NCBI RefSeq assembly: GCF_006345805.1
Contig: NC_043008.1
Coordinates: 14,942,001 to 15,006,000, forward strand
DNA from: Octopus sinensis
Lineage: Eukaryota
Direction of reading: 5' to 3'
Length of the DNA: 64,000 nucleotides
Positions within the stretch are counted from its first letter, which is position 1, and each line of letters starts with the position of its first letter. Below are positions 11,131 through 64,000 of the stretch, in pieces. A program made the translations under genes and the position numbers. The notes beneath the pieces were generated by a model, which was not told the DNA's origin, did no database searches, and was given only the letters and a program-made list of their open reading frames with translations.

Positions 11131-11139
11131 CATGCGCCA

Positions 11140-13516: not shown

Positions 13517-13848
13517 ATGTATGTATGTATGTATGTATGTATGTATGTATGTATGTATGTATGCATGTATGTATGCATGCATGTCCGTAAGTTATCTTCT
13601 ATTTTTAATCATTTAAATTCTTCTCGGAGGAAGAAGCTGGTCTTTAACAAAGACGCAAAGCATCATCCATGAAATAGGGATAACAAGAACAATTATCAGG
13701 TTTTAAACTTGAGAAAAGTCTTGAATATTTTTATCGTTCCACTTACAGATTGTAGGAAATTCAGTTTTCGAGAAAATTCGAAAGTGCGAACTCAGAGTTG
13801 CACTGGAGGGAAAGCGCAAATAGAAATAAATGAATAAAATATGTATTG

Positions 13849-13938
13849 AGACACTTGCCCAAGGTGCCACGCAGTGGGACTGAACCCGGAACCATGTGGT
13901 TGGTAAGCAAGCTACTTACCACACAGCCACTCCTGCGC
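13849..13938 (-). mobile_element. SINE family A head fragment
   Basis: Reverse complement of the A head. Confidence 0.85.
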
Positions 13939-14850: not shown

Positions 14851-16343
14851 GCTCGATCTGCTAGACATATCAGTCAAATCTCCCTCAAACTGCACTCCAC
14901 CGCATTTTAAAAATAAGCGCTCAATATGCTAAAAGTATCAGCTAAATCTCCCTCAAACCGCAGTCCCTCGCAATTCAACAATAAACGCCCGATATGCTAG
15001 AAATATCAGTCAAATCTCCCTCAAACTGCACTCCACTGTATTTCAAAAATAAGCGCTCGATCTGCTGGAAATATCAGCTAAATTTCCCTCAAACTGCATT
15101 CCACTGTATTTCAAAAATAAGCGCTTGATATGCTAAAAGTATCAGCTAAATCTCCCTCAAACTGCAGTCCCTCGCATTTCAACAATAAACACCCGATATG
15201 CTAGAAATGTCAGTCAAATCTCCCTCAAACTGCACTCCACTGTATTTCAAAAATAAGCGCTCGATCAGCTGAAAATATCAGCTAAATCTTCCTCAAACTG
15301 CAGTCCCTCACATTTCAACAATAAACACCCGATATGCTAGAAATGTCAGTCAAATCTCCCTCAAACTGCACTCCACCGCATTTTAAAAATAAGCGCTTGA
15401 TATGCTAAAAGTATCAGCTAAATCTCCCTCAAACTGCACTCCACTGTATTTCAAAAATAAGCGCTCGATCTGCTGAAAATATCAGCTAAATCTCCCTCAA
15501 ACTGCACTCCACCGCATTTTAAAATAAGCGCTCAATATGCTAAAAGTATCAGCTAAATCTCCCTCAAATTACAGTCCCTCGCATTTCAACAATAAACACC
15601 CGATATGCTAGAAATATCAGTCAAATCTCCCTCAAACTGCATTCCACTGTATTTCAAAAATAAGCGCTCGATATGCTAGAAATATCAGTCAAATCTCCCT
15701 CAAACCGCATTCCACTGTATTTCAAAAATAAGCGCTTGATATGCTAAAAGTATCAGCTAAATCTCCCTCAAACTGCAGTCCCTCGCATTTCAACAATAAA
15801 CACCCGATATGCTAGAAATATCAGTCAAATCTCCCTCAAACTGCACTCTACCGCATTTTAAAAATAAGCGCTCGATATGCTAAAAGTATCAGCTAAATCT
15901 CCCTCAAACTGCAGTCCCTCGCATTTCAACAATAAACACCCGGTATGCTAGAAATATCAGTCAAATCTCCCACAAACTGCGTTCCACTGTATTTCAAAAA
16001 TAAGCGCGCGATTTGCTGAAAATATCAGCTAAATCTCTCTCAAACTGCAGTCCCTCGCATTTCAACAATAAACACCCGATATGCTAGAAATGTCAGTCAA
16101 ATCTCCCTCAAACTGCATTCCACTGTATCTCAAAAATAAGCGCTCGATATGCTAAAAATATCAGCTAAATCTCCCCCAAGCCACAGTCCCTCGCAATTCA
16201 ACAATAAACACTCGACATGCTAGAAATATCAGTCAAATCTCCGCCAAAACGCATCTAACCACAACATTTTAAAAATAAGCGCTCGATCTGCTAGAAATAT
16301 TAGCTAAATGACCCTTAAACAGCACCCTATCGGATTTCAAAAT
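14851..16343. repeat. 68-bp satellite, ~21-22 monomers of two main types
   Basis: AAATCTCCCTCAAAC recurs at 14876, 14944, 15012 and onward. Confidence 0.95.
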
Positions 16344-19005: not shown

Positions 19006-19367
19006 ATCATAGCACCACGTTGACTCATGCCTTAAAAAGAAAATTGTAATGACGAAAACTGTGTGGAAGATTTTCGGCTTTCCTTGTAATTCGAAGGATC
19101 AGCCTTGTCACACACAGTGTGAAGTTTACGTCAACAGTATAGGAGTCCGTGTATTACTCAGTCACTGAAATGAGCAGGTTGACTTAACTACTAAATACTC
19201 ATCGTCGACATCGACGGAAATCCATTTACTTTACTGTCGTTGCATCTGAATCTGTTTTAACCCTAGGCCGGTCATATACGAGTAGACACATGAACATAGG
19301 GACTACAATGCTAACATTCTCATTTTTGCACTTAAACTATTAATATATAAACCAGTATATCCTACAA

Positions 19368-19781
19368 TACTCTTTTACTCCTTTACTTGTTTCAGTCATT
19401 TGACTGCAGCCATGCTGGAGCACCACCTTTAGTCGAGCAAATCGACCCCAGGATTTAGTCTTTGTAAGCCTAGTACTTATTTTATCGGCCTCTTTTGCTG
19501 AACCGCTAAGTTACGGGGACGTAAACACACCAGCATCGGTTGTCAAGCGATGGTGGGGGACAAACACAGACACACAAACATATACACACATACATATATA
19601 TACACATATATACACATATATATATACATATATACGACGGGCTTCATTCAGTTTCCGTCTACCAAATCCACTCGCAAGGTTTTAGTCGGCCCGAGGCTAT
19701 AGTAGGTGCCACGCAGTGGGAATGAACCCGGAACCATGTGGTTAGTAAGCAAGCTACTTACCACACAGCCACTCCTACGCC
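19368..19781 (-). mobile_element. SINE family A, full length
   Basis: Reverse complement of the A consensus from head to (GTAAAAGA)n tail. Confidence 0.9.
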
Positions 19782-20545
19782 TATAAGATATGATTTTGGG
19801 GGAGATCTGGCTGCTATTTCTAGGATGTGGATGGCTACGTTGGAGACAACCCTTATTGGCTCGTTCTGCAACTGTTGCACGTACAGCAATCTCAACAGCG
19901 CTCCTGTAATTGTTGTTATTGCTGTAGCTAATACGGTTTCCACTGACATTTTTGTCCTTATTCTTACTGGACATGTTAAAGCGAGTCTAACGCAGCTGCT
20001 GTTGCTGACAGGCAATTAATACTTCTATTTTTACAGCTATTGCTCGCATTCACCGCAATGCTTTTGTGTCGAAATTGGCATCTTTCTCATGTTGCCGGAA
20101 GCTACCAATTTGCGAGGATCAGGACTCGAAGGAAGGAATAATTTCGGCATTAACCAAATGTATAAGACATCAGAATGGAAATTTTGAATTGCGCATTTTA
20201 TAAGTCTGTACGTCACAGCGCTATTGTTTTGCATTACTGAAATTAAATGATGGTTTTTATACGGCTAAATTCCTTTGAAAAGCATTTTCCTTCGCTTAAT
20301 TTGCCAATGCCCGAAAGTACGGTATTTAAAAATTGTAAAGTTCACCTCGAAGACAATTTAGCTTCCATATATTCTACTGCGTTTGTTCACAAATTCTTGT
20401 TTCTAGATGAATGAATACCGGTGTTGTAAAAGGCTAAAATACCTCCTTTTTTAAAAGATAAGCATATTCACAGTACCCAAGAACATCAACAGCAACAACA
20501 ACAACAACAACAACAACAATAATAATAATAATAATAATAATAATG

Positions 20546-21217: not shown

Positions 21218-21504
21218 TAATAATAATAATAATAATGATAATCCTTTCTACTATAGGTGCAAGGTCTGAAATTTGGGGGAAATTACATCGACCCCGTTGC
21301 TCAATTGGTACTTATTTTATCCATCCCGACAGAATGATAGCCAAAGCCCACCTCATCTGCTGTACGTAAATTGAAGACCAACAGTTAAAAATGCTTGAGA
21401 AATACGCGAAGTTTCAGTGTTTATAACCTACTAACGGGAGTGAAAATACACAAATGATGAGCATTTCAGGTATTCCATATAATCAACATGGCTCTCATAT
21501 TCTA

Positions 21505-21910
21505 GGCGCAGGTGCGGCTGTGTGGTAAGAAGTTTGCTTCCCAACTACATAGTTCCGAGTTCAGTCCCACTGCGTAGCACCTTGGGCAAGTGTCTTTTAC
21601 TATATATTCGGGCCGAGCTGGCAGAAACGTTAGCACGCCGGGCGAAATGCGTAGCCGTATTTCGTCTGCCGTTACGTTCTGAGTTCAAATTCCGCCGAGG
21701 TCGACTTTGCCTTTCATCCTTTAGGGGTCGATAAATTAAGTACCAGTTACGCACTGGGGTCGATGTAATCGACTTAATTCGTTTGTCTGTCCTTGTTTGT
21801 CCCCTCTGTGTTTAGCCCCTTGTGGGTAGTATAGAAATATATATATTCGGGCCGACCAAAGCCTTTTGAGTAGATTTGGAAGACGGAAACTGAAAGAAGC
21901 CTGTCGTCGG
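21505..21910 (+). mobile_element. SINE family A 5' part interrupted by a family D insertion
   Basis: A head at 21505-21616; A resumes CCAAAGCC...GGAAACTGAAAGAAGCC after 21855. Confidence 0.85.
21617..21839 (+). mobile_element. SINE family D monomer with 16-bp TSD
   Basis: TSD TATATATTCGGGCCGA at 21601-21616 and 21840-21855. Confidence 0.9.
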
Positions 21911-22264
21911 TATATGTGTGTATATTGCACTCTTCTTACAACCGCAAGAGTATTTTAACTCTTATTTCTAGTAATTTATTTGATTTGGCACCTTTAGGGG
22001 GTTGGCCAGGTCAGTGCTTAGTAGTAGAAAATATATGTAAAGATGTATACATATGTATATATTAGGCATGTATATATATATTTATACAGATGTTTATACA
22101 TATCAATATCTACATATACAATTCGTACTCATATGTATATGTACACATGCACACCTATATATACGTGCATTTGTATGTATTATCGCCCCTGTACACGCAG
22201 GTGTATATAGCTTGCATACATACATACATTCACAGATACACACATACATACATACACGCATACA

Positions 22265-23816: not shown

Positions 23817-24262
23817 GTCTCTTTTCGGTTTGAACGGCAGTTTTTTAAAAATAATTTCCACGTAACTTAAACACTTTTAAACTTCGTATACCGGTAGAAT
23901 GTGTTTATAAAACATCTTTTTCTCTTGGCTTTATTGAGAAAATTCTATAGTTTGTAAGATATTTGTTGTTTTTTTTTCTTCAATTTCTGCAATTTCAACC
24001 AATCAATGACGTCTATTGAGGTAAAACAAAACATTCTGTGCCGTATGAATATGTCCCTCGTTTAAGAAACAGATTGGGTTTATTTACATTTGTGAAGAAA
24101 AAAAAAGATACCCTTCCCCCACCCCTAACCCTAACCTTAACCTTAACTAACCCTAACCCTAAAAGAGATTGACATGCAATAGATCGATACTAGGGTCATC
24201 ATTATGGGTGACAATTTCATATGACACAGCAGAAAAAACTGCCGTTCAAACCGAAAAGATCA
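23817..24262. mobile_element. Non-autonomous DNA transposon (MITE) with (CCCTAA)n-like tract, copy 1
   Basis: TIR consensus GGATCTTTTCGGTTTGAACGGCAGTTTT; TSD TCAACTGG (23809-23816, 24263-24270). Confidence 0.9.
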
Positions 24263-27533: not shown

Positions 27534-27956
27534 TATTTCTTATTTCTTTATTGCCCACAAGGGGCTAAACATAGAGGGGACAAACAAGGACAGACAAAAG
27601 GATTAAGTCGATTATATCGACCCCAGTGCATAACTGGTACTTAATTTATCGACCCCGAAAGGATGAAAGGCAAAGTCGACCTCGGTGGAATTTGAACTCA
27701 GAACGTTAAGACATACGAAATACCTATTTCTTTACTACCCACAAGGGGCTAATCACAGAGAGGACAAACAAGGACAGACAAAAGGATTAAGTCGATTATA
27801 TCGACCCCAGTGCGTAACTGGTACTTAATTTATCGACCCCGAAAGGATGAAAGGCAAAGTCGACCTCGGCGGAATTTGAACTCAGAACGTAATGGCAGAC
27901 GAAATACCGCTAAACATTTCGCCCGGCCTGCTAACGTTTCTGTCCACCTCGCCGCC
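27534..27956 (-). mobile_element. SINE family D dimer
   Basis: One full and one head-truncated unit; the tail ends (AAGAAAT)2A. Confidence 0.9.
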
Positions 27957-29859: not shown

Positions 29860-30360
29860 GAAGGCACATAGCTCAGTGGTTAGAGCGTCGGGCTCGCAGT
29901 CATGAGGTAGTGAGTTCGATTTCCGGACGAGGCTGTGTGTTGTGTTGTGTTCTTGAGCAAGGCACTTTATTTCACGTTGCTCCAGATCACTCAGCTGTAG
30001 AAATGAGTTGCGACGTCACAGGTGCCAAGCTGTATCGGCGTTTGCCTTTTTCTTCAGTGGTGTGAAGAGGCGAGGCTGGTATGCATGGGCGTCTGCTGGT
30101 CTTCCATAAAACAACCTTGTCCAGACTTGTGCCTCGGAGAGGAACTTTCTATGTGCAATCTCAATGTTTAGCAGTATTTCGTCTGCCGTTACGTTCTGAG
30201 TACAAGTTCCGCCGAGGTCGACTTTGCCTTTCATCCTTTCGGAGTCGATTAAATAAGAACCAGTTACGCACTGGGGTCGATATAATCGACTTAATCCGTT
30301 TGTCTGTCCTTGTTTGTCCTCTCTGTGGACAAATATGAATATGACCGAAGGGGGTCTTTA
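29860..30360 (+). mobile_element. SINE family F (tRNA head, V/CORE-like central block) interrupted by a D fragment at ~30163-30327
   Basis: GAAGGCACATAGCTCAGTGGTTAGAGCG...TTCTTGAGCAAGGCACTTTATTTCACG; the tail ATGACCGAAGGGGGTCT resumes at 30341 (compare 53742-53965). Confidence 0.8.
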
Positions 30361-30449
30361 AGTACGTATAAAAAATGGTTTCAAATATTGGCCCAAGGTC
30401 AGCAATTTCGGGAAAGTGGGTAAGTTGATTGCATCGTCCCCAGACAAAC

Positions 30450-30872
30450 GAAATACCTATTTTTTTACTACCCACAAGGGGCTAAACACAGAGAGGACAA
30501 ACAAGGACAGACGAACGGATTAAGTCGATTATATCGACCCCACTGCTTGACTGGTACTTATTTAATCGACTCCGAAAGGATGAAAGGCAAAGTCGACCTC
30601 GGCGGAATTTGAACTCAGAACGTAACGGCAGACGAAATACCTATTTTTTTACTACCCACAAGGGGTTAAATACAGAGAGGACAAACAAGGACAGACAAAC
30701 AGATTAAGTCGATTATATCTACCCTAGTGCGTAACTGGTACTTATTTAATCGACCCTGAAAGGATGAAAGTCGAAGTCGACCTCAGCGGAATTTGAACTC
30801 AGAACGTAACGGCAGACGAAATACCGCTAGGCATTTCGCCCGGTGTGCTAACGTTTCTGCCAGCTCGTCGTC
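30450..30872 (-). mobile_element. SINE family D dimer plus a remnant of a third junction
   Basis: GAAATACC-TATTT junctions at ~30457 and ~30642. Confidence 0.9.
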
Positions 30873-31549
30873 TTATATACCGAATTAAATATTATACACA
30901 CATTCAGCGAGAGATGGTGAGTAATACTACATATGGATTTATGGTTGTTCATTTTGATAGTTCAAGAACAAGATGCTAACAGACACATACGCAAAGCACG
31001 CGTAGGCAATTCACGTAGGCATATACGATTGTGTTTGCGTGTATGTTTTTGTATTGGTACCTGTTTGTATGTGTACGTAAGTGTTACCGTGTGTGTGTTG
31101 CCTAACTGTGTATCTACATTGTGTGAGTAGATTTTCTGAAGAATGTGAGTAGATTTGCACGAATAAATAATCATCATCCTTATGCTTAAAGTATTTCCCT
31201 GGAGCTATTTTACCTAGAATAGAACGTCTGCTAAGATGAATGCTAACTGGTCTGGCGAATTTTAGCCCTCGGCTTCGTCATTAGAATTTTACCTATGGAG
31301 ATAAAAATAATAAATTGTTAATGAAGGTAAAAGTTTTACGTTGGATTCTATGTTGCATTAATCGAAAGGAATATATTGTCGAAGAATCTAGCAGAATTGT
31401 AAAGAAACAATTTAGAAAAGTCTAGTTTCTAATTCTGTGCCAAAAAACAAAAAACAAAAAAACAAAACAAAAAAAAACCCCAAAAAAGAAATAAAAAAAG
31501 AAAATCAAGAACTATAATAACGTGATGTTGATATTAATATAATGATATG

Positions 31550-32999: not shown

Positions 33000-33345
33000 T
33001 GTGGCCATGCTGGGGTAGCGCATTGAATAGTTTAGTCGAAGAAATCGACCCCACTACCTATGTATTTTTCCTAAAGTCTGGTACTTATTCTGTCATTTTC
33101 TTTTTGTTGAGGCGCTAAGTTACGAGAACGTAAACAATTCAAAATTGGTTGCCAATGGGTGGTTTATGACAAATATAACCATAGGCACCCTCACCCCTCA
33201 CACCTACATACCTCCACCCTCATGTACGACAGGCTTCTTTCAGTTTCCGTCTATCAAATCCACTTACAAGGTTTTGGTCGGCTCGGGAATATAGTAGACG
33301 ACACTAACCGAATGCGTTACACAATGAGACTGAACTTGGAACTTG
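33000..33345 (-). mobile_element. SINE family A, old diverged copy
   Basis: TGTGGCCATGCTGGGG...GCTAAGTTACG...GGCTTCTTTCAGTTTCCGTCT. Confidence 0.7.
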
Positions 33346-33399
33346 AATGCTAAGAGACTACTGTTGTATATACCGAATTAAATATTTTTTGTACTCTAT

Positions 33400-38630: not shown

Positions 38631-38870
38631 GTTTCTGCTTGCTCCTTCTTCTTCCGCCATTCTTTCTCTTTCATACCCTCTTTTAAAAATCATGAAACCA
38701 ATAATATTTGCGTTGAGGCAGCGGTGAATGCAATGATTCCTCGAAGAGGAGCGGCTGTCGTCGCCGCTTCTTAACCACGCTTTCTCACATCTTATTTCTT
38801 CGAGGGAATTCTAACCCTAGGTCATTTACAGACCTATATTAGGTACTTGCCAATATTGTTTACTCACTAA

Positions 38871-39712
38871 GGTGACAAGCTGGCAGAATCGTTAAACACG
38901 CCGGGCGAAATGCTTAGCGGTATTTCGTCTGCCGCTGCGTTCTGAGTTCAAATTCCGCCGAGGTCGACTTTGCCTTTCATCCTTTCGGGGTCGATTAAAT
39001 AAGTACCAGTTATGCACTGTGGGTTGATATAATCGACTTAATCCGTCTGTCTGTCCTTGTTTGTCCCCTCTGTGTTTGACCCCTTGTGGGTAATAAAGAA
39101 ATAGGTATTTCGTCTGGCAGAAACGTTAGCATGCCGGACGAAATGCGTAGCCGTATTTCGTCTGCCGCTGCGTTCTGAGTTCAAATTCCGCCGAGGTTGA
39201 CTTTGCCTTTCAGCCTTTCGGGGTCGTTAAAAATAAGTACCAGTTACGCACTGGAGTCGATATAATCGACTTAATCCGTTTGTCTATCCTTGTTTGTCCT
39301 CTCTGTGTTTAGCCCCTTGTGGGTAATAAAGAAATAGGCATTTCGTCTGCCGCTACGTTCTGAGTTCAAATTCCGCCGGGGTCGACTTAGCCTTTCATCC
39401 TTTCGGAGTCAATAAATTAAGTACCAGTTACGCACTGGCGTCAATGTAATCGACTTAATCCGTTTGTCTGTCCTTGTTTGTCTCCTATATGTTTAGCCCC
39501 TTGTGGGCAATAAAGAAATAAGAATCGTTAGCACGCTTCGATAAATGCTTAGCGGCATTTCATCCATCTTTACGTTCTGAGTTCAAATTCTGTAGAGGCT
39601 GACTTTGCTTTTTATCGGGGTCGATAAAATAAGTACCAGCGGAATACTGGGGTCGATGTAATCGACTTACCTTTCCCTCAAAATTTCTGTTTTTGTGCCA
39701 AAATTTGAAACC
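38871..39712 (+). mobile_element. SINE family D tetramer; the last unit is diverged and has tail iii
   Basis: Junctions at ~39111, ~39337 and ~39519 (AAGAAATA|AGAATCGTTAGCAC). Confidence 0.9.
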
Positions 39713-39825
39713 GGTATAGGTGGTTCTCATAGCTTAATGGTACAGAGTGCTCAGCCGGAATTTGTGAGGTACACGGTTCAATCCTCCGTAGAAGCTTGCT
39801 GGCCACTTTACAAAAAGAAAAAAAA

Positions 39826-40030
39826 GCGGTGAGCTGGCAGAATCGTTAACATGCAAGCCAAAGGTATTTCGTCCCTCTTTACGTTCTGAGTTCAATTTCT
39901 GCCGAGGTCGACAATACCTTTCATCCTTTCGGGATCAATAAAATAAGTACCATATGTGCATTGGCGTCAGTATAATTGATTTGGTTCCTCCACCGAAATT
40001 ATTAGCGGCCTTGTGTCGAAATTAGAAACC
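39826..40030 (+). mobile_element. SINE family D, old monomer (tail iii)
   Basis: GCGGTGAGCTGGCAGAATCG...CCTTTCATCCTTTCGGGATC...GGCCTTGTGTCGAAATTAGAAACC. Confidence 0.75.
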
Positions 40031-40269
40031 AATGTTGTTAGTCACTCACACCACTCGACCTCTGATACGACTAGTTCTTTTTTGGTGGGTTCTCCAATCG
40101 TAATCAACAGATCAGGGTTTCACAATTTCTTGCTGAACAACCTGTACAGATGGCTTGTTTATAGTGATCTAATATTTTTTTCTGTACGTAAGCTGACTCC
40201 CTCTATAAAATCGATATTGCCTGTACACGTGCACGATGTGCCACATATTAGATGTCGAAGTGGTTGCGG

Positions 40270-40513: not shown

Positions 40514-40920
40514 GTAAGTGCAACCCGGGAGGGGAGCAGTGACAGTTCGAACCCCACCTCCTCTGCTTTGGTGGAATAAAAGTGCCACCAATCAGGCCCG
40601 TCTAAGATGCGTACAAATCAACGAAACTGTTCTCTATACACTTGCGCAATACCGAGGATTACTATCTTGTAGAGTTATATCGAACAGCTGATCTGGTTAG
40701 ATGCTGGGTTCAATAATCACGAGGATTATCCCGTGGAATTTTCCAAACCTGGAAGGACAGTCATTCGTTTCTGCTTCGTGGTTAAAGTGAAAGCAATTGA
40801 GCTGAGAACAGAATTGATATGACTTCGGACAGGTATTTTCCTCTTCAGCCAAGCCTTCATCAACTTCCTCAGATTTAAATCGAACAAAATGAGGGTGGAG
40901 AGGAAGATGCTAACGATTCT

Positions 40921-41541
40921 TATTTCTTTATTGCCCATAAGGGGCTAAACATAGAGGGGACAAACAAAGACAGACAAACGGATTAAGTCGATTACATCGA
41001 TCCCAATGCGTAACTGGTACTTAATTTATCGACCCCGAAAGGATAAAATGCAAAGTCGACTTCGGCGGAATTTGAACCGAGAACGTAGACAGATGAAATA
41101 CCTATTTCTTTATTGCCCACAACGGGCTAAACACAGAGGGGACAAACAAGGACAGACAAACGGATTAAGTCGATTATATCAACTCCAGTGCGAAACTGGT
41201 ACTTATTTAATCGACCCCGAAAGGATGAAAGGCAAAGTCGACCTCGGTGGAATTTGAACCGAGAACGTAGCGGCAGACGAAATACCTATTTCTTTACTAC
41301 CCACAAAGGGCTAAACACAGAGGGGACAAACAAGGACAGGCAAACGGATTAAGTCGATTACATTGATCCCAGTGCGTAACTGCTACTTAATTTATCGTCC
41401 CCGAAAGGATGAAATGCAAAATCGACCTCGGCGGAATTTGAACCGAGAACGTAGACAGGCGAAATACCTATTTCTTTACTACCCACAAGGGGCTAAACAC
41501 AGAGGGGACAAACAAGGACAGACAAAGGGATTAAGTCGATT
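40921..41541 (-). mobile_element. SINE family D array (3 head-less units plus a partial unit)
   Basis: ~182-bp period; junctions at ~41103, ~41285 and ~41467. Confidence 0.9.
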
Positions 41542-44540: not shown

Positions 44541-44635
44541 GTTAACTTATGTTAGACCAAAATGAAAGGATGAAAAGCAAAGTGGACCTCGGCGGAATCT
44601 GAACTCAGAATGTGAAGACGGACGAAATCCCACTA

Positions 44636-45047
44636 GGCGTAGGAGTGGCTGTATGGTAAGTAGCTTGCTTACCAACCACATGGTTCTGGGTTCAGTCCCA
44701 CTGTGTGGCACCTTGGTCAAGTGTCTTCTACTATAGCCTCGGGCCGACCAAAGTCTTGTGAGTGGATTTGGTAGAAGGAAACTGAAAGATGCCCGTCGTA
44801 TATATGTATATATATATATGTATGCGTGTGTATATGTTTGTGTGTCTGTGTTTGTCCCCCCAATATCGCTTGACAACCGATGCTGGTGTGTTTACGTCCC
44901 CGTAACTTAGCGGTTCGGCAAAAGAGACCGATAAAATAAGTACTAGGCTTACAAAGAATTAGTCCTGGGGTCGATTTGGTCGACTAAAGACGGTGCTCCA
45001 GCATGGTCACAGTCAAATGACTAAAACAAGTAAAAGAGTAAAAAGTG
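44636..45047 (+). mobile_element. SINE family A, full length
   Basis: Matches 1918-2322. Confidence 0.9.
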
Positions 45048-46529
45048 AGTACTTGACTGGTTTATTTTGTCGATCCCCTAAGGAATGATAAAGTTGATTT
45101 CGAAACTTGTGAGGGTGGCCCGCGTCCATACTGAGGGAGTGCTCCTGTCTAGAGTCGAGGATAGTAGAGAAATGTCTTTGGAGGCCTATGTAAGCATTTC
45201 TTCCGGTGTGCTAACGATTCTGCCAGCTCGCCGCCTTGTATCTAATAATTCTGCCAATCCATTGCCTTCTCAGAAATTTCCCCGTTACACAGCCTTGAGG
45301 TAAGAATAAGCGATTATTTACTTAAATTGCAGTACTGGGTTCAAACTTCTTCATAAACAAAATCCCACAATAGACAGACGTTCCAACCCAAATGGTACAG
45401 AAAAGGTTTCTGAATTACTAACAATTATTAAAACAACGAAGCAAAAACAAAAAACACAAACAAAAGGAAAAGAGGATAGAATTATGATAAGCTCCAGCAA
45501 ACTGCAATATTTTCCAGTAATGGCGTCGGCAAAAAAGAAAGAGAGGGAAAAAGATTGGTAGCGGTTGGTGATGGGTGTTTGTAGTGGCGATGGTTGTTTT
45601 GGTAGAAGGAGGTGGGGGGGGGCAAAATATAAAATAATATAATAAGACTAAACGACCAGTAATTAACGAAATGATTGCATGATCACAACAAACCGTTCGA
45701 CCACTCCGGCTGAAAAGCTAAATAGCATCAGTGATTTGTATCTCTCTTATACATTATAGAACACAAGGGTAATTTCATCGTCTATTGGTTAATACTTTGT
45801 TCATTATGTAGTAGTATTGAGTCCAGTGCACAACAACGAGAATGATGAACCCGACGACGACGACGACTACTACGACTGCTACTACGACTACTACTACTCT
45901 ATCTAACAGCATCAACAAGAAAAACAACAATGGCCACGAAGACAAAACGAATAATTACAAATGTATCGATCTTTTGTTGTTGTTAGTTATGATCTTTTTT
46001 TTTATAATTGTTTAGCATTTCTTTTTTTGTTTTTGTACCACCAGAGACTTTTTTCCCCCCTCTCGAACTTAGGAGCGAACACGTATGCTATTTATTTTGT
46101 TAAAGTCATCTAACCGGATGTCTGCTTACACCCCATTGTGGTTGATTGATTACAAACATAAGAATCTTCTACCTTTTCTCTCCTTTCATTTCAACTATGT
46201 AAATTACTAACCGGACGTTAGTAATATTATAACTGATGTGTATTCTGAGTTCAAATACAACCAGGGTCCGTTGTGGCTTTCATCTCCGCGAAATCAATAA
46301 AATAAATATCGCTAGTAAATTCAGGATGAACAGATCGATTGTACACACACTTCCAATATACAAAAAAATCTGGTTCTTGTAACAACAAATCAGACAAACA
46401 AACGTCTACGGGTCGCTCGACCTGTTAGAAATGGCAACTTTCAATAATAACAAGAAATGTTTTCGCACAATTAGATAAAACTAAAAACTCCATCTAAATT
46501 AACCAACAAACTTACTACGGACTTTTCTC

Positions 46530-47413
46530 AAATCACATCACCGACACTTAAAAAAAAATACTTTATACGACACCAACGCTAAAGCTAAAAGACTACAAAC
46601 CATGTTTTTACAGACGATAGAGAAGAGTCTGTAGCTTTATGATGCTCTGTATTTCAAAGTATCACAGAATCACTGTTGCTACAAAACTTTCCCACCAGAC
46701 TTATTAACCTCACAAAAAACTGATAGAATCATCAGAAAATATAATCTTATCTCTTTATTGCCCACAAGGAGTTAAACATAGAGGAGACAAACAAGGACAG
46801 AAGACAAATAAGAAAAGGCAAAGGGAATACGTTGATTACATTGACCCCAGTGCGTAACGGGTACTTAATTTAACGATCCCAAAAGGATGAAAGGCAAACT
46901 CGACCTCGGCGGAATTTGAACTCAGAACGTAGCAGCAGACGAAATACCTATTTCTTTACTACTCAGAAGGGGCTAAACACAGAGAGAACAAACAAGGACA
47001 GACAAACGGATTAAGTCGATTATATCGACCCCAGTGCGTAACTGGTACTTATTTAATCGTCCCCCGAAAGGATGAAAGGCAAAGTCGACCTCGGCGGAAT
47101 TTGAACTCAGAACGTAGCGACAGACAATGTACCGCCCAGCGTTTCGCCCGGCGGGCTAACGTTTCTGCCAGCTCACCGCCTTTTCAGAAAATCATATCAA
47201 CCGACACTTAAAAAAACAAACAAACTTTGTACGACACCTACGCTAAAGCTAAAAGACTACAAACCATGTTTTTTATAGGCGATAAAGAAGAGTCTGTAGC
47301 TCTATGAAACTCTCTATTGCAAAGTATCACAGAATCACTGTTGCTACAAAACTTTTCCACCAGACTTATTAACCTCACAAAATGCTGATAGAATCATCAG
47401 AAAATATAATCTT
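46530..47413. repeat. ~220-bp direct repeats (46530-46748, 47188-47413) flanking a minus-strand family D dimer (46749-47183)
   Basis: CCGACACTTAAAAAA...CGCTAAAGCTAAAAGACTACAAACCATG...TCAGAAAATATAATCTT occurs twice. Confidence 0.9.
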
Positions 47414-47749
47414 GACAGCACAATCCCCTAAATTATCATCAGCTTCCTACTTGTCATGTTAGAATGACACTAATTTTCTGTCACCTTAAAGTAAAGACAC
47501 ATTGGACAACGATGTTGTCCTAGATACATAAAAAAGTCGAAATACTGATAGTTGAAACGCTATTGATCATGAATCTACGTGATCAGAGACGATCAGGTCC
47601 AGACAACTGCGACTATTTCAACTGGTTCTTGCAATCATTAACCAACAAGGAAATTACTTCATGGTTGCTCGATCTGTTAGAAATAGAAGGCATATCTCCC
47701 TCATATCTCAACTTAAACTAATTCAGTTCATTATTAGTTAGTGGAGCAA

Positions 47750-48360
47750 GGCGGCGAGCTGGCAGAAACGTTAGCACACCGGGGGAAATGCTCAGCGGAA
47801 TTTCGTCTGCCGTCACGTTCTGAGTTCAAATTCCGCCGAGGTCGACTTTGCCTTTCATCCTTTCGGGGTCGATTAAATAAGTACCAGTTACACACTGAGG
47901 TCGATATAATCGACTTAATCCGTTTGTCTGTCCTTGTTTGTCCCCTCTATGTTTAGCCCCTTGTGGGCAATAAAGAAATAGGTATTTCGTCTGACTTCAC
48001 CTTCTAAGTTCAAATGCCGCCGGTGTGGACTTTCGGGGTCAGTGAAATAAGTACCAGTTGCGTACTGGGGTCGATGTCATCGACTATCCCCCTCCTTCAA
48101 ATTTCAGGCTTTGAGCCTATAGTAGAAAGGATTGTTAGTTAACGGAGTAAGGCAGTGAGTGGGTAGAGTCATTAGTGCACCGGACAAAATGCTTAGTGGT
48201 ATTTCTTCCGGCTCTTCCCGTTCTGAGTTCAAATTCTACCGAGGTTTGTCTTTGCCTTTCATCATTTCGAGGACAATAAAATAAGTACAAGTTGAGTCTT
48301 GGAGTCGATGTACCCTCCCTCTTAAACTGAAGGTCTTATGCCAAAATTTGAAACCATCAT
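47750..48360 (+). mobile_element. Family D cluster: young unit + older tail-ii unit, then an adjacent old tail-iii copy
   Basis: Junction GAAATA|GGTATTTC at ~47981; diverged flanking duplication TTAGTTA..GGAG.AAGGC. Confidence 0.85.
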
Positions 48361-48414
48361 TAGTCAATGGAGTTTTTGCTATAATTCAAATACAGTATTG
48401 TATATATGTACAGT

Positions 48415-48470
<56 letters not shown>

Positions 48471-48786
48471 ATATAATATATATATTATATATATATATAT
48501 ATGTATATTTGGAGGGCAAGCCACTATGTGGTCGGCCGTATGCTAGAAGTGGATCACCTACGATCAAACTACAAAGAAAAGAATATTCTCTAGAGGAAAA
48601 TTCAGCGGACACCAGAACGAAAATGCGGGCAAGACAGACGAAAATTAAATAAAAATCAGAATTACTCACAGACCGGTGGTTTCGCCTATTTATCTCCGTC
48701 AATATTCAATTTATCATCTCCCTCATTATATATATATATATATTGTATATATGTACATATTGTACATATGTAATACGTACAATGAA

Positions 48787-49200
48787 GGTGGCGAGCTGGC
48801 AGAAACGTTAGTACGCCGGGCGAAATGCTTAGCGGTATTTCGTCTGCCGTTACGTTCTGAGTTCAAATTCCGCCTAGGTCGACTTTGCCTTTCATCCTTT
48901 CGAGGTCGATAAATTAAGTACCAGTTACGCACTGGGGTCGATATAATCGACTTAATCCCTTTGTCTGTCCTTGTTTGTCCCCTCTGTGTTTAGCCCCTTG
49001 TGGGTAGTAAAGAAATAGGTATTTCGTCTGCCGCTACGTTCTGAGTTCAAATTCCGCCGAGGTCGATTTTGCCTTTCATCCTTTCGGGGTCTATAAATTA
49101 AGTACCAGTTATGCACTGGGGTCGATATAATCGGTTTAATCCGTTTGTCTGTCCTTGTTTGTCCCCTCTATGTTTAGCCCCTTGTGGGCAGTAAAAGAAA
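48787..49200 (+). mobile_element. SINE family D dimer with a 15-bp TSD
   Basis: AATACGTACAATGAA at 48772-48786 and 49203-49217. Confidence 0.92.
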
Positions 49201-49399
49201 CAAATACGTACAATGAACAGCACTTCATTCAACTGATATTATCCACACGTTACTAAATGCCGCACTTAAAAGTATCACAAAATCAATTATTTTACTGTTT
49301 TCTCCCACTAGACTTGCTAACTTCAAGAAAACTGTGACATCAGTACAAGAAACAATGTAGAAAGGAACTATTAGGAAGCTCATTGAATATCATGTCTGC

Positions 49400-49593: not shown

Positions 49594-49981
49594 CCTATAA
49601 CCGTTGGATATATTCTACCTGAAATTCAAGCGCAGCATCTTGTCAAACTCTGTATTGCTCTGAATCTGCTTGAGGAGTATGCTAAAATACACAAATCAAG
49701 AGCGTTGTAGGTTAAAATATCGGATGGGCATAAGTCCGCTAGGGACGTTAACTTTTACATTTAATAAGCATTTTTTAATTATTTAAATGAAAGAAAAAAA
49801 ATTCCCCTTGGAAAAGGAATGAGTTATTCGATTTTCATTCCCCGGCCAGCTTTTTTGCAATGAGTGGATGACAACAAAATCATAGCGGTGGTGTGACACC
49901 CTGGAGGCTAAAATGATTACATAAAACATCAAAACATCACGACCGTATGGCAATTCTCATGACCAAAATATAAACAACATA

Positions 49982-50384
49982 GGCGCAGAAGTGGCTGTGT
50001 GGTAAGTAGCTTGTTAACCAACCACATGGTTCCGGGTTCAGTCCCACTGCGTGGCATCTTGGGTAGGTGTCTTCTGCTATTGCCCCGGGCCGACCAATGC
50101 CTTGTGAGTGGATTTGGTAGACGGAAACTGAAAGAAGCCTGTCGTATATATGTAAATATATATATATATATGTATGTGTGTGTGTTTGTGTGTCTGTGTT
50201 TGTTCCCCTAGCAGTGCTTGACAACCGTCACTTAGCGGTTCGGCAAAAAGAGACCGACAGAATAAGTACTGGGCTTACAAAAAGAATAAGTCCCGGGGTC
50301 GAGTTGCTCGACTAAAAAAGGCGGTGCTCCAGCATGGCCGCAGTCAAATGACTGAAACAAGTAAAAGAGTAAAAGAGTAAAAGA
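49982..50384 (+). mobile_element. SINE family A, full length (small internal deletion)
   Basis: Matches 1918-2322; tail (GTAAAAGA)3. Confidence 0.9.
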
Positions 50385-59186: not shown

Positions 59187-59484
59187 AAATTTTCCTGTTA
59201 TGTTTATTTGATAAGACAAAGCTAAGATATTTCGTTTTAGTATTTGGTTTGTGAGATTCTTGCTGTGAACTCATGTGTTGAAATAAATTTTTGTATCTCG
59301 GGAGGGTCATTATACAAATCATAATCTCACGCACTGGTTAATTGTTTAATAATTCAACCAATCAACTGATCAGTTGTTTGATTAATTATCCCGTTAATTA
59401 ATTAATCCATCAGTTAGGTACTTATACTACAATGAACCTATAATTACAAGTTCATCTCTTTAACAATATTTTATTCCTATATTA

Positions 59485-59897
59485 GGACAGCGAGCTGGCA
59501 GAATCGTTAGCACGCTGAGCGTAATGCTTAGCAGTATTTCGTTTGCCGTTACGTTCTGAGTTCAAATTCCTGCCGAAGTCGGCATTTCCTTTCATCCTTT
59601 CGGGGTCGATTAAATAAGTACCAGTTACGCACTGGGGTCGATATTATCGACTTAATCCGTTTGTTTGTCCTTGTTTGTCCTCTCTGTGTTTAGCCCCTTG
59701 TGGGTAGTAAAGAAAAAGAAATAGGTATTTCGTCTGTCTTTACGTTCTGAGTTCAAATTCCGCCGAAGTCGGTATTGCCTTTCATCCTTTCAGGGTCGAT
59801 TAAATAAGTACCAGTTACGCACTGGGGTTGATGTAATCGACTTAATCCCTTTGTTTGTCCTCTCTCTGTTTAGCCCTCTGTTGGCAATAAAGAAATA
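59485..59897 (+). mobile_element. SINE family D dimer
   Basis: Junction GAAATA|GGTATTTC at ~59723. Confidence 0.9.
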
Positions 59898-60296
59898 ATT
59901 ATTTTATTCTTGTACAGACTCATGGGAGAGAAAACTTTTTCTTTTATGTTAATCCTTTTATCCGGAGAAATAGTGGCATAAATAATGTGGTATTTCTTTT
60001 ATAGAGTATCAAACTATCGAGTTTTCGGCCTGCATAAGTCTTTTCGAAAAAAAAATAAAAAACAAAAAACTACATTTCTCGCCTGGATATTTCCGATAGG
60101 CAGAATTGTTAGGGTGTCGGACAAAATACATTATGATGTTTTAATAAAATCTGTTACGTTCTAAGCTTAAAGTGTATCGGAGTCAAAATTTTCCGTCTCA
60201 CGAGGCCGATAAAATAAGATACGCTGTCCTTCCATACTTTGTAGTCTTGTTCTTGTGCCTCTGCAAGAAACCAATATATGTTTTATTTTTTTAATG

Positions 60297-60900: not shown

Positions 60901-61074
60901 AGTTTGTGAATAATATTTTTGGTCAAATTAGCGATGTAGGGGATTTAGTTAGAGATCGGAACGATTGTTAGGTGTTCATTTAACTTTTAATTTACGGGGA
61001 CCAGCACAGCCGACGGGGAAGCGGCGATATGGTCACTAAAAAACAGAATGATGCATTGGATAAAATGGCCTTAG

Positions 61075-61925
61075 ATTGACATAGAGCAAAAAGACAAGCT
61101 AGTTACGGCTGGAATGTGTTTCATCATAGATTTACCTGCTTCATTGAAAACAACAACAACAACAACAACATTGTTGACAATATCGACGACAACAACCGAC
61201 AACATCAACAACAGCAGCAGCCGTCCAAGAATTTGGACCTGGAGATCTCCATTTCCAGCGACTTCGAGGGACACCTCCCAGTGGTTTCGGGCGTCAACGA
61301 AGAGCCCTCGACTACAACAAAATGACCAAAGTTTTTCTTCCAAGGTCTGGGGTCTCCCGCCCCTAAGCCCTAGACCATCAACTAATCACCCTTACCCGTC
61401 TTGTTACTTAACATCATCAAGAAGAAGAAGAAGAAGAAGAAGAAGAAGAGAAGAAGAAGAAGAACAACAACAACAACAACAACATTGTTGACAATATCGA
61501 CGACAACAACCGACAACATCAACAACAGCAGCAGCCGTCCAAGAATTTGGACCTGGAGATCTCCATTTCCAGCGACTTCGAGGGACACCTCCCAGTGGTT
61601 TCGGGCGTCAACGAAGAGCCCTCGACTACAACAAAATGACCAAAGTTTTTCTTCCAAGGTCTGGGGTCTCCCGCCCCTAAGCCCTAGACCATCAACTAAT
61701 CACCCTTACCCGTCTTGTTACTTAACATCATCAAGAAGAAGAAGAAGAAGAACAACAACAACAACAACAACAACAACAGCAGCAGCAGCAGTATCGCCTT
61801 ATGACACGGATAAATCGGCCATAGGTACACTGTCTGGAAGAATAGGATGTTCACTGCTGGAAGACATTTGCTCTTTTATAGATAAACAACAATTGAACTT
61901 TGGTAAAGATGAAGAATGTAGGTAG
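61075..61925 (+). pseudogene. Coding-like segment containing a 314-bp tandem duplication (pseudo-exon or mis-assembled exon)
   Basis: IDIEQKDKLVTAGMCFIIDLP... and a GC3-rich frame DLEISISSDFEGHLPVVSGVNEEPSTTTK*; the block repeats at 61171 and 61485. Confidence 0.4.
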
Positions 61926-62718: not shown

Positions 62719-62988
62719 AAGCACCAAATAATGTATTAAAAAACAAATAAATAACGGAGAATTCTGCAGACTGACCAATCATGACATTTGTGTGTGACTA
62801 GGATGGACCGATTAGAATTAATAATTGAATCCATTAATCCGTTGTCTATCTTGTGTATCACATATGATACATCGGAAATATTTATCGAGCCTCCATTCAT
62901 CATATATGATACACACTCCCGATTGTTTTTCGACGACCAGAGTAACTTGGGACTTATGAAAGGAGAGCTTGATATTACTCAGAACATA

Positions 62989-63753
62989 AAGGCAGCGAGT
63001 TGGCAGAAACGTTAGCACGCCGAGCGAAATGTTTAGCGATATTTCGTCTGTCTTTACGTTCTGAGTTCAAATTCCGCCGTAGTCAACATGCCTTTCATAC
63101 TTTCGGGGTCGATTAAATAAGTACCAGTTACGCACTGGGGTCGATATAATCGACTTAATCTGTTTGTCTGTCCTTGTTTGTCCTCTCTGTGTTTAGCCAC
63201 TTGTGGGTAGTAAGGAAATAGGTATTTCGTCTGTCTTTACATTCTGAGTTCAAATTTCGCCGTGGTCGACTTTGCATTTCATCCTTTCGGGGTCGATAAA
63301 TTAAGTACCAGTTACGCACTGGTGTTGATGCAATCGACATAATCTGTTTGTCTGTCCTTGTTTGTCCCCTCTATGTTTAGCCCCTTGTGGGTAATAAAGA
63401 AATAAGAAACGTTAGCACGCTGAGCGAAATGTTTAGCGATATTTCGTCTGTCTTTACATTCTGAGTTCAAATTCCGCCGTGGTCGACTTTGGCTTTATCC
63501 TTTCGGGATCAATAAATTAACTGCCAGTTGCATTCTGGAGTCGATCTAATCGACTGGGCCCCTCCCACCAAATTTCGGGCCTTGTACCTATAGTAGAAAA
63601 GAATCGTTTGCACGCCGTGCGAAATGCTTAGAGGTATTTAAATAGTCTGAGTTCAAATTCCAACTTTCCTTTCATCCTTTCGTGGTTAATAAAATAAGTA
63701 TCAGTTAATCACTCCCCTGAAATTGCTGGCCTTGTGCCAAAATTTGAAATCTA
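62989..63753 (+). mobile_element. SINE family D four-unit stack with three different tails inside one 16-bp TSD
   Basis: TSD TATTACTCAGAACATA at 62973-62988 and 63754-63769; units start at 62991, 63221, 63405 and ~63600. Confidence 0.92.
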
Positions 63754-64000
63754 TATTACTCAGAACATACAAAACTAAGATTAACAAAAAACCTCAAAAA
63801 ATAAAGCATGGACGTTTACGATAAACTTATGAAAGTGATTTAGACAGACAAAACATTTCTATCTCATCATTTAAAAGGCCAGAATCGACTTGAAGTTACG
63901 ATTGAACGAAGGGTAATTGTCCAGTGTACTGTGATGGAACTCGGCACATCGAGATCGAAAACCAAACTGCGTAGCCACTTAGCTGATGCGACCATATTAT

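What the first reader, a model, noticed from the sequence alone, without database searches (positions are those of the whole stretch)
62973..63769. Self-stacking SINE: four family-D units with three tail types inside one 16-bp TSD
Seen: one TSD (TATTACTCAGAACATA) encloses a head plus four units. Units 1-2 carry tail i (...CCCTTGTGGGTAATAAAGAAATA), unit 3 carries tail ii (...GGCCTTGTACCTATAGTAGAAA), and unit 4 is the most decayed with tail iii (...GGCCTTGTGCCAAAATTTGAAA). Units 3 and 4 restart at the same head position (AGAA[A/T]CGTT). The same young-5'/old-3' polarity appears at 38871-39712 and 47750-48130. Inference: younger subfamilies repeatedly inserted into the tRNA-derived head of older copies of their own family, leaving an age-ordered stack in which the outer TSD belongs to the oldest copy. 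The tail repeat (AAGAAAT)n, seen at 27534-27550, offers microhomology to the head AGAAA for priming. I do not know of such self-targeting being described for cephalopod SINEs.
Basis: partly seen in the sequence, partly recalled or inferred. Interest (0 to 1): 0.8.

Follow-up and report, generated by a model that had tools for sequence, protein, structure and literature searches.

The report
Composite octopus-type SINE stack, one TSD
A 764-bp chain of four related SINE units does sit inside one perfect 17-bp target-site duplication, but it is probably a standard two-unit SINE fused to two 5'-truncated relatives and inserted in one step, a known kind of retroposon chimera, not proof of a SINE that homes into its own family.

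Summary
A perfect 17-bp TSD (62972-62988 and 63753-63769) encloses head + K1 + K2 (tail i) + K3 (tail ii) + K4 (tail iii). K3 and K4 both restart at head position 17.

- K1-K2 is the family's standard dimer. Ten of 11 arrays in the window have more than one unit, joined at the same point, and 5' and 3' units differ at fixed sites (p=1.3e-4).
- Tail-i units show no significant 5'-to-3' ageing (K1 = K2 = 5 private changes).
- K3's first 87 nt differ at only 2 positions from K's own head0 and K2.
- No internal junction has its own TSD.
- K's TSD is perfect like those of young arrays, whereas TSDs of old elements are about 16% decayed (likelihood ratio about 14).
- Array F carries the same tail-to-head junction with no old SINE beside it.
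- Array E chains five elements end to end, including an unrelated poly(A) SINE, inside one TSD.

Best reading (about 0.45): one integration of a composite template, made by reverse-transcriptase template switching or by read-through of an older stack. Iterative self-insertion remains possible (about 0.25). No other cephalopod DNA could be retrieved, so the genome-wide test was not run.

The parts
62972..62988 (.). 5' copy of the target-site duplication ATATTACTCAGAACATA (17 bp)
   Evidence: Only two occurrences in the window; flush with the first head base
62989..63039 (+). head0: full-length 51-nt head (AAGGCAGCGAGTTGGCAGAAACG...), with box-B-like motif downstream
   Evidence: Aligns from consensus position 1. 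No tRNA model hit
63040..63222 (+). K1: tail-i 184-bp unit, A-type (5'/internal type), ending ...GTAGTAAGGAAATA + GG linker
   Evidence: B-score 0/6; alignment of 25 units
63223..63404 (+). K2: tail-i unit, B-type (terminal type), ending ...GGGTAATAAAGAAATA
   Evidence: B-score 5/6. Same number of private changes as K1 (5 and 5)
63405..63599 (+). K3: unit restarting at head position 17 (AGAAACGTT), tail ii. Its first 87 nt are nearly identical to head0/K2; the rest is about 17-18% diverged from every copy
   Evidence: 1/35 mismatches to head0 (next best 4); 1/52 to K2 (next best 4/52); 11/63 in the remainder
63600..63752 (+). K4: unit restarting at head position 17 (AGAATCGTT), tail iii. It has three internal deletions, but its 3' tail looked by eye close to the tail-iii majority of the few copies in the window
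   Evidence: Alignment with other tail-ii/iii copies
63753..63769 (.). 3' copy of the TSD
   Evidence: 17/17 identical to 62972-62988
38869..39712 (+). Comparator array E: head-E1, then 13 nt of a next unit (39104-39116), restart at head position 14, E2, E3, then a position-17 restart (39521) into tail-iii unit E4
   Evidence: The E3-to-E4 junction sequence is identical to that in F
39713..40028 (+). Small poly(A) SINE-like element (39713-39825) and full-length tail-iii copy E5. Both are joined end to end to E4 without internal TSDs. The outer TSD-like pair 38850-38868 / 40029-40046 spans the whole chain
   Evidence: Boundary-anchored alignment 16/19, p=0.006; no TSD at the internal joints
40908..41541 (-). 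Comparator array F: 5'-truncated, 3.4 tail-i units, ending ...AAAGAAATA + AGAATCGTTAGCA (head positions 17-29, 40908-40920), then unrelated DNA
   Evidence: No old SINE on either side. All units share the private variant CTCGG
47748..48128 (+). Comparator array H: head + tail-i unit + tail-ii unit joined at the unit boundary, flanked by decayed TSD copies (47731-47747, 48131-48148). A third copy follows the adjacent tail-iii SINE H3 (48355-48372)
30380..30874 (-). Comparator array D: head + two A-type tail-i units + a unit whose 3' part is tail iii; no detectable TSD
48785..49202 (+). Canonical A-B dimer (array I) with its own perfect 15-bp TSD. Other canonical dimers: C 27534-27956(-), G 46744-47182(-), J 59484-59899(+). 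Monomer B 21611-21839(+). Array A 12784-13338(+)

Best explanation
The K array is a composite retroposon insertion made in one integration event. Its parts are:
- a full-length copy of the family's normal dimer (head + A-type unit + B-type unit, tail (AAGAAAT)n);
- a tail-ii unit, joined to the dimer at a 4-5-nt AGAA microhomology and 5'-truncated at head position 17;
- a deletion-bearing tail-iii unit, joined to the tail-ii unit at AGAA and 5'-truncated at the same position.

Proposed mechanism (inferred):
1. Target-primed reverse transcription started on the tail-iii 3' end.
2. When the nascent cDNA reached head position 17 its 3' end read ...CGTTTCT or ...CGATTCT. That mimics the DNA primer that normally anneals to an A/G-rich SINE tail, so it was captured by the tail of the next SINE RNA. 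This happened twice.
3. Synthesis ran to the 5' end of the dimer RNA.

Equivalently, a single Pol III read-through transcript of an older stack was copied. K contains no T4 terminator.

Shown: the architecture, the microhomologies, the single perfect TSD, the canonical dimer, and recurrence of the junction. Inferred: that the joints were made at the RNA/cDNA level and in one event.

The homotypic 184-bp tandem units of the family are best explained the same way. RT stops or runs off at the apex of a 13-bp head hairpin (positions 33-45/50-62) and resumes on a tail, after which the dimer is inherited.
For: 1. One TSD, 17/17, flush with a full-length 5' end and an intact tail-iii 3' end. TSDs of tail-i arrays are perfect or nearly so (B 16/16, I 15/15, J 10/10, G 12/13). 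TSDs of old tail-ii/iii elements are decayed (n8756 13/15; H 14/17, 15/18, 12/14; E 16/19). So P(17/17) is about 0.72 against about 0.05, a likelihood ratio of about 14 for a young TSD (own calculation).
2. The layout (upstream partner full length, downstream partners 5'-truncated, same orientation, no internal TSDs) matches the signature reported for Alu/LINE-1 and U6/LINE-1 template-switch chimeras (PMC13174262).
3. Array F ends with the identical junction ...AAAGAAATAAGAATCGTTAGCA, followed and preceded by non-SINE DNA. The junction was therefore inside the inserted sequence.
4. Array E chains E4, an unrelated poly(A) SINE and full-length E5 end to end with no internal TSDs, inside one boundary-anchored TSD (p=0.006). 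Head homology cannot explain this.
5. K1-K2 is the pre-formed A-B dimer: terminal B-score 4.9 against internal 1.6, permutation p=1.3e-4.
6. K0, K1, K2 and K3 share otherwise rare variants.
7. Four of about seven 5'-truncated stand-alone copies start at consensus positions 40-52, at the hairpin apex where the tandem junction (position 50) lies.
8. There is no T4 run in the 764 nt of K.
Against: - K4 looks much older than K1-K2 (three deletions, roughly 12% substitutions by eye). A one-step event needs an RNA from an already decayed source, or a pre-existing stack.
- In the window the younger type is always 5' of the older type, as successive additions would predict.
- At H the TSD (14/17) fits an old insertion about 3 times better than a young one.
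- The first 28 nt of array E look old (5 differences, against 0 in the next 24).
- No stand-alone copy in the window is truncated at position 17.
- Sharing of variants within arrays can also arise by in-situ gene conversion, so evidence item 6 is not specific.
- F has no detectable TSD, so its retroposed origin is not proven.
- All numbers come from 11 arrays in one 64-kb window.
Confidence: 0.45

Rival explanations
1. K4 inserted first and owns the TSD. Later a tail-ii element, and then a tail-i dimer, integrated into the head of the resident copy at position 16|17. A nicked head strand ending ...TTTCT primed on the AGAA-containing tail. The 5' end was resolved by annealing to the resident head, which hides the TSD and gives a seamless join.
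For: - Recurrent position-17 junction with AGAA microhomology (K twice, E, F).
- Strict young-5'/old-3' polarity in D, E, H and K.
- Decayed outer TSDs at H and E, and none detectable at D.
- The first 28 nt of E look old.
- A head-in-head remnant at 45100-45290 shows that heads can be hit.
- K0 positions 17-32 are identical to K3 positions 17-32, the length of a typical TSD.
Against: - The perfect 17-bp TSD is unlikely for an element as old as K4 (about 0.05).
- K1-K2 is a pre-formed dimer, not two insertions.
- Identity between K0/K2 and K3 runs on to position 103, far beyond any TSD.
- F has the junction but no host SINE.
- The E chain includes an unrelated SINE joined end to end.
- The ordinary nested insertion in the window (B, inside repeat family X) shows a normal visible 16-bp TSD.
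- Nick sites inferred from TSD starts are |TAT/|AAT-like, unlike GGC|AGAA (sequence reading).
Confidence: 0.25
2. DNA-level repair or recombination. A break in a resident old SINE was repaired by synthesis-dependent strand annealing, or by ectopic gene conversion, using a dispersed tail-i array (or its cDNA) as donor. This added young units 5' of the old tail, which has no homology and so stays old. Later gene conversion within the array homogenised the 5' modules.
For: - Units of one array share private variants far more often than chance: 8 of 23 doubleton variants fall within one array, against 5.6% expected (p=2e-5).
- K3 is a mosaic with a fairly sharp boundary.
- At H, D and E1-to-E2 the upstream array runs 11-13 nt into the next unit before the sequence type changes.
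- The distribution of homology explains the polarity.
Against: - It does not explain the perfect TSD any better than the nested-insertion model does.
- The position-17 joins rest on only 4-5 nt of homology.
- It does not explain array F or the poly(A) SINE in the E chain.
Confidence: 0.15
3. Assembly artefact: a mis-joined or collapsed assembly of similar SINE copies.
For: The region is highly repetitive. No reads were available to check it.
Against: - The perfect TSD sits exactly at both ends.
- The four units are clearly distinct in sequence.
- Similar architectures occur at several other loci in the window.
Confidence: 0.03

Closest known systems
Template-switch chimeric retrocopies (U6/LINE-1 and Alu/LINE-1 chimeras; PMC13174262); end-to-end template jumping by the R2 reverse transcriptase (own knowledge)
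   Same: Several RNAs are copied into one cDNA bounded by one TSD. All parts have the same orientation. The upstream partner is full length and the downstream partners are 5'-truncated. There are no TSDs at the internal joints.
   Different: All partners here are SINEs of one superfamily. The switch point is fixed (head position 17) and falls on AGAA microhomology with the acceptor tail. The apparent frequency is very high: 4-5 of the 11 arrays in this window are fused. One partner looks old.
Dimeric and multimeric SINEs (Alu; Twin SINE of Culex; dimers/trimers of tRNA units as listed in PMC4758252)
   Same: A multi-unit element is propagated as a unit, with unit-specific diagnostic differences. 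This holds for the tail-i A-B dimer.
   Different: The repeated unit is not a whole tRNA-like monomer. It is a 184-bp segment starting inside the head (position 50-52, the hairpin apex). Copy number varies from 1 to more than 3.4 between loci.
Nested TE insertions as used for relative dating (transposition-in-transposition; own knowledge)
   Same: A younger element lies inside or against an older one. Polarity carries age information.
   Different: The insert has no TSD of its own, no split host is visible, and the junction lies at one fixed homologous position.
Octopus CORE-SINEs OR1/OR2 (Ohshima and Okada 1994, cited in PMC4824008 and PMC4758252)
   Same: Host group, an abundant SINE, and a body that by eye resembles the CORE domain (...TTTCATCCTTTCGGGGTCGATAAATTAAGTACC...).
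   Different: No reference sequence was available, so identity with OR1/OR2 was not tested. No tandem or composite architecture turned up in the papers I could search.

Membership tests
SINE (non-autonomous, LINE-mobilised retroposon) | Short, non-coding, dispersed copies flanked by TSDs of variable sequence | tested here: met
   At least 11 tail-i arrays and about 15 older copies in 64 kb. TSDs at B, G, I, J, K, n8756, H and E. No ORF with a Pfam domain
SINE (non-autonomous, LINE-mobilised retroposon) | tRNA-, 5S- or 7SL-derived head with an internal Pol III promoter | tested here: inconclusive
   ARAGORN found none. Rfam found none at gathering score or at E<=1. Only a box-B-like GAGTTCAAATTCC and a weak box-A-like motif were seen by eye
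SINE (non-autonomous, LINE-mobilised retroposon) | 3' tail shared with a partner LINE | not testable with these tools
   No LINE ORF in the window. No cephalopod DNA in the searchable collections
CORE-SINE superfamily / octopus OR1-OR2 | Conserved roughly 65-bp CORE domain alignable to reference members | not testable with these tools
   Resemblance recalled from memory only. No reference sequence is held; the literature only states that OR1/OR2 are CORE-SINEs
Pre-formed multimeric SINE (master carries several units) | Same multi-unit architecture at independent loci, each with its own TSD | tested here: met
   Met for the tail-i A-B dimer: C, G, I, J and K, plus the cores of E and F
Pre-formed multimeric SINE (master carries several units) | Position-specific diagnostic substitutions between units | tested here: met
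   Six sites. Terminal B-score 4.9 against internal 1.6, permutation p=1.3e-4
Pre-formed multimeric SINE (master carries several units) | The whole four-unit K architecture (i-i-ii-iii) recurs elsewhere | tested here: not met
   No second i-i-ii-iii array in the window. E is i-i-i-iii and its downstream unit shares no deletions with K4. This cannot be tested genome-wide
Template-switch chimeric retrocopy | One TSD around the chimera; partners collinear; upstream partner full length; downstream partners 5'-truncated | tested here: met
Template-switch chimeric retrocopy | Partners transcriptionally active at the same time | tested here: inconclusive
   K4 looks old. K3's 5' module looks contemporary with K1/K2. 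The TSD belongs to the young class
Nested (self-targeted) insertion | The insert is bounded by its own TSD made of host-element sequence, and the host is split into two flanking parts | tested here: not met
   No duplicated host sequence at K2|K3 or K3|K4. The 16-nt identity between K0 17-32 and K3 17-32 continues to position 103, so it is not a TSD. Control: B inside family X shows a clear 16-bp TSD
Nested (self-targeted) insertion | Divergence increases from the inserted element to the host (5' to 3') | tested here: inconclusive
   K4 is older-looking. K1 = K2 (5 and 5 private changes). Across arrays, 22 private changes in the unit preceding the terminal one against 34 in terminal units, p=0.14. 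K3 is a mosaic

The most novel reading that the evidence does not exclude
The SINE family homes into itself. Its (AAGAAAT)n tail primes reverse transcription on a nicked AGAA at position 17 of resident family heads, and the 5' end is resolved by head homology. New copies therefore stack preferentially on old ones inside the old TSD, giving age-ordered arrays. This would be a sequence-homology-guided target choice not described for SINEs.
Probability: 0.22. Interest if true: 0.65.

Novelty: new variant of a known kind. Interest (0 to 1): 0.38.

Why it matters
SINEs make up roughly a tenth of octopus genomes (11.6% in O. vulgaris, PMC13282606), and how they diversify there is poorly described.

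If 4-5 of 11 insertions are multi-RNA chimeras joined at fixed points, the partner reverse transcriptase switches templates far more often than mammalian L1 is thought to. That would give a direct route by which new composite SINE families, and new tail-to-partner-LINE combinations, arise.

It also matters in practice:
- Repeat annotators will split or mis-date such arrays.
- "Age by divergence" landscapes will mix units of different apparent ages that arrived together.
- Presence/absence markers based on these loci need the composite structure to be understood.

If the self-homing reading were right instead, it would be a new kind of target-site choice for a non-autonomous retroposon.

Tried and rejected
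1. Getting more copies or orthologous loci. Exact-pattern scans of viral, metagenome and prokaryote-genome collections with 30-mer and 21-mer SINE cores found nothing. Exact look-ups of two flank ORFs found nothing. A homology search with a 71-aa ORF read through the SINE antisense strand found nothing. The genome-wide and orthologous-site tests could therefore not be run.
2. tRNA origin of the head. ARAGORN and Rfam (gathering score and E<=1) gave no hit.
3. Partner LINE. No long ORF outside microsatellites. Pfam gave only a low-complexity "Protocadherin" hit at 61401-61925, which I discard as spurious.
4. Idea that the RNA tail GAAAUA pairs with UAUUUC at position 52 and brings the unit ends together. 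Rejected: pairing probability 0.000. The fold instead shows a 13-bp hairpin at 33-45/50-62.
5. Idea that the 16-nt identity between K0 17-32 and K3 17-32 is a hidden TSD. Rejected because near-identity continues to position 103.
6. 5'-to-3' ageing among tail-i units. Not significant.
7. A TSD for arrays D, A, F and C. None found above chance.
8. An "old 5' remnant" in the first 16 nt of fused arrays. 7/64 mismatches against 7/80 in unfused arrays, so no difference (counted by eye).
9. Literature searches for a described tandem or composite octopus SINE found none. Albertin 2015 is not held.

Full report
**What is there.** The window looks like cephalopod (octopus-type) DNA, rich in microsatellites and SINEs. 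I could not confirm the source organism.

At 62972-62988 and 63753-63769 the 17-mer ATATTACTCAGAACATA occurs, and nowhere else in the window. Between the two copies lie 764 nt:
- a 51-nt head (62989-63039);
- two 182-183-nt units with the tail ...GGGTA[G/A]TAA[G/A]GAAATA (K1 63040-63222, K2 63223-63404);
- a unit that restarts at head position 17 (AGAAACGTT, 63405) and ends in ...GGCCTTGTACCTATAGTAGAAA (K3, to 63599);
- a further unit restarting at the same position (AGAATCGTT, 63600), with three internal deletions, ending ...GGCCTTGTGCCAAAATTTGAAATCT (K4, to 63752).

The TSD is one base longer than stated.

**The family in the window.** BLAST of the K monomers against the window finds 11 tail-i arrays and about 15 copies of older relatives with tail ii or tail iii.
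- Ten of the 11 tail-i arrays contain more than one 184-bp unit (C, G, I, J and K have two; A and D about three; E three; F at least 3.4; H has one tail-i unit plus a tail-ii unit). B is a monomer.
- Successive tail-i units always meet at the same junction, ...AAGAAATA-GG-TATTTCG..., which is tail joined to head position 50-52.
- TRF reports the same 184-bp periodicity independently.

**K1-K2 is a pre-formed dimer.** In an alignment of 25 units, six sites separate the last tail-i unit of an array from the units before it. Terminal units carry GATAAATTAAG, TGTAATC, CCCCTCTATG and GGGCAAT. Internal units carry GATTAAATAAG, TATAATC, CCTCTCTGTG and GGGTAGT.
- The mean "terminal-type" score is 4.9 for terminal units and 1.6 for internal units (permutation p=1.3e-4). 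Single sites reach p=0.002-0.008.
- K1 scores 0 and K2 scores 5.
- Dimers with this A-B order sit at independent loci with their own TSDs (I 15/15, J 10/10, G 12/13).

Units 1-2 of the stack are therefore one element, not two insertions.

**Age order.**
- Among tail-i units, private (singleton) substitutions do not increase significantly from the unit preceding the terminal one to the terminal unit (22 against 34 over seven arrays, p=0.14). K1 and K2 have five each.
- K3 is a mosaic. Its head segment (positions 17-51) differs from head0 at 1 of 35 positions, while the next closest head in the window differs at 4. Its first 52 unit bases differ from K2 at 1 of 52, next best 4 of 52. The following 63 bases are 17-18% different from every copy.
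- K3's 5' module also carries tail-i-type states (AGAAACG, GCGAAATG, TCGTCTG) and the K-specific variants.
- Only K4 looks clearly older.
- Units of a single array share private variants far more often than chance: 8 of 23 doubleton variants against 5.6% expected (p=2e-5; F has CTCGG in all three full units; J, D, C and E also show this). Concerted change within arrays or within their sources is therefore common, and it blurs age signals.

**Junctions.**
- The tail-to-position-17 join occurs four times: K2|K3, K3|K4, E3|E4 (39520|39521) and the end of F (40921|40920).
- It always falls where the tail's AAGAA(A/T) overlaps the head's CAGAA(A/T)CG.
- Four of seven junctions where the next unit is not an ordinary in-register tail-i unit hit one base of a roughly 230-nt element. 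Uniform nesting gives about 3e-6.
- None of these joins has a duplicated host segment.
- As a control, monomer B sits inside an unrelated repeat family (about eight other copies in the window) with a plain 16-bp TSD.

**Evidence that the junction can be part of one cDNA.**
- Array F is 5'-truncated. It ends ...GGGCAATAAAGAAATAAGAATCGTTAGCA, identical to the E3|E4 junction, and is followed and preceded by non-SINE DNA. No host SINE is present.
- Array E is bounded by a boundary-anchored TSD-like pair, CCAATATTGTTTACTCACT and CCAATGTTGTTAGTCACT (p=0.006).
- That pair encloses E1-E4, an unrelated small poly(A) SINE-like element (39713-39825) and the full-length tail-iii copy E5. These are joined end to end with no internal TSDs.
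- This is what end-to-end template jumping gives. Head homology cannot explain it.

**TSD age.**
- TSDs of tail-i arrays are perfect or nearly so: 1 difference in 54 positions, excluding K.
- Detectable TSDs of old elements carry about 16% differences: n8756 13/15, the three H copies 14/17, 15/18 and 12/14, and E 16/19.
- K's 17/17 has probability about 0.72 under the young rate and about 0.05 under the old rate.
- The old rate is probably an underestimate, because more decayed TSDs go undetected (D, n44323 and n62717 have none).
- This argues that the TSD was made around the time tail-i was active, with K4 already inside the inserted sequence.
- At H the opposite holds weakly: 14/17 fits an old TSD about three times better, and the tail-i unit inside is only 2-3% diverged. 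The window may therefore contain products of more than one process.

**Where reverse transcription stops.**
- RNAfold of a young monomer predicts a 13-bp hairpin, positions 33-45 paired with 50-62.
- The tandem-unit boundary (position 50) is the first base of its 3' arm.
- Four of about seven 5'-truncated stand-alone copies begin at consensus positions 40, 43, 44 and 52.
- This suggests a stop or RNA end at the hairpin apex. From there the enzyme either terminates, giving truncated copies, or resumes on another tail, giving a tandem unit. This step is inferred.
- No stand-alone copy starts at position 17.
- K has no T4 run in its 764 nt, so a Pol III transcript could span it.

**Mechanism I consider most likely (about 0.45).** K entered as one cDNA. 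Either the enzyme copied a tail-iii RNA, then a tail-ii RNA, then a dimer RNA, switching each time when the nascent cDNA end (...TTTCT/...ATTCT at head position 17) could anneal to the next A/G-rich tail. Or it copied a read-through transcript of an older stack.

The closest documented parallel is the set of Alu/LINE-1 and U6/LINE-1 chimeras: one TSD, same orientation, upstream partner full length and downstream partner 5'-truncated, attributed to template switching or RNA ligation (PMC13174262). Template switching is also the usual explanation for module exchange among mollusc SINEs (PMC4758252).

**Rivals.**
- Break repair or gene conversion with dispersed arrays as donors (about 0.15) explains the mosaics, and why the sequence type changes 11-13 nt into a unit at H, D and E1|E2. 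It does not explain F or the poly(A) SINE in the E chain.
- An assembly artefact is unlikely (about 0.03).

**Limits.** All statistics rest on one 64-kb window. The subfamily consensuses for tails ii and iii come from six or seven decayed copies each. No cephalopod sequence could be retrieved from any collection. The tRNA origin of the head, CORE-SINE membership and the partner LINE could not be verified.

**Novelty.** Dimeric SINEs, RT-made chimeras and nested insertions are all known. What may be new is the combination in one family: a heritable dimer whose repeat starts inside the head, a fixed microhomology switch point at head position 17, and a high apparent frequency of fused arrays. 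I found no description of this for octopus SINEs in the searchable literature. I rate it a new variant of a known kind, of moderate interest.

Noticed in passing
30874-30893 and 33367-33386: A perfect 20-mer direct repeat (TATATACCGAATTAAATATT) brackets 2,473 bp. It lies between the 3' end of a tail-ii SINE copy that starts exactly at unit position 52 (33548-33388, minus) and the head of array D. It looks like the TSD of a later 2.5-kb insertion. Before that insertion the two SINEs were separated by exactly a TSD-length spacer.
   Followed up: partly
47731-47747, 48131-48148, 48355-48372: Three diverged copies of one target sequence: [TSD] array H [TSD] tail-iii SINE H3 [TSD]. Two elements used the same target site in succession.
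   Followed up: partly
39713-39825: A single-copy, roughly 113-bp element with box-A/B-like motifs (TAGCTTAATGG, GGTTCAATCC) and an A-rich tail, wedged end to end between two tail-iii SINEs. ARAGORN and Rfam do not call it a tRNA.
   Followed up: partly
45100-45290 (minus strand): A decayed SINE head fragment (positions 1-28) is followed after 3 nt by a second, better-preserved head (positions 1-47) that then breaks off into unrelated sequence. This is a head-in-head arrangement.
   Followed up: no
1917-2075, 4439-4581, 11015-11138, 13849-13938, 19618-19783, 21500-22000, 33226-33343, 44633-44815, 49980-50145: A second abundant repeat family containing ...CCTTGGGCAAGTGTC..., which from memory resembles the 5' half of the CORE domain. 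Monomer B is inserted in one copy with a clear 16-bp TSD.
   Followed up: partly
13336-13520: Array A's third unit breaks off at unit nt about 135. It continues into ...TATTTCAAAGGGCCAGCCTTGTCACAC..., a sequence resembling the tail-ii/iii 3' modules, possibly a fourth tail type. A 36-nt relative lies at 19085-19120.
   Followed up: partly
30163-30327: A fragment of a tail-i unit, truncated at both ends (consensus positions 40 to about 205), lies in inverted orientation about 50 bp from the 3' end of array D.
   Followed up: no
14850-16342; 2608-3865; 24123-24162: A 68-bp satellite with about 22 copies and a 204-bp higher-order period; a 1.26-kb degenerate (CCA)n tract; and a short telomere-like (CCCTAA)n run inside the window.
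   Followed up: no
61071-61343 and 61382-61657: Two spurious ORFs that start with the same roughly 65 residues point to a roughly 310-bp tandem duplication. The weak Pfam 'Protocadherin' hit at 61401-61925 falls on low-complexity T/R-rich translation and is not credible.
   Followed up: partly
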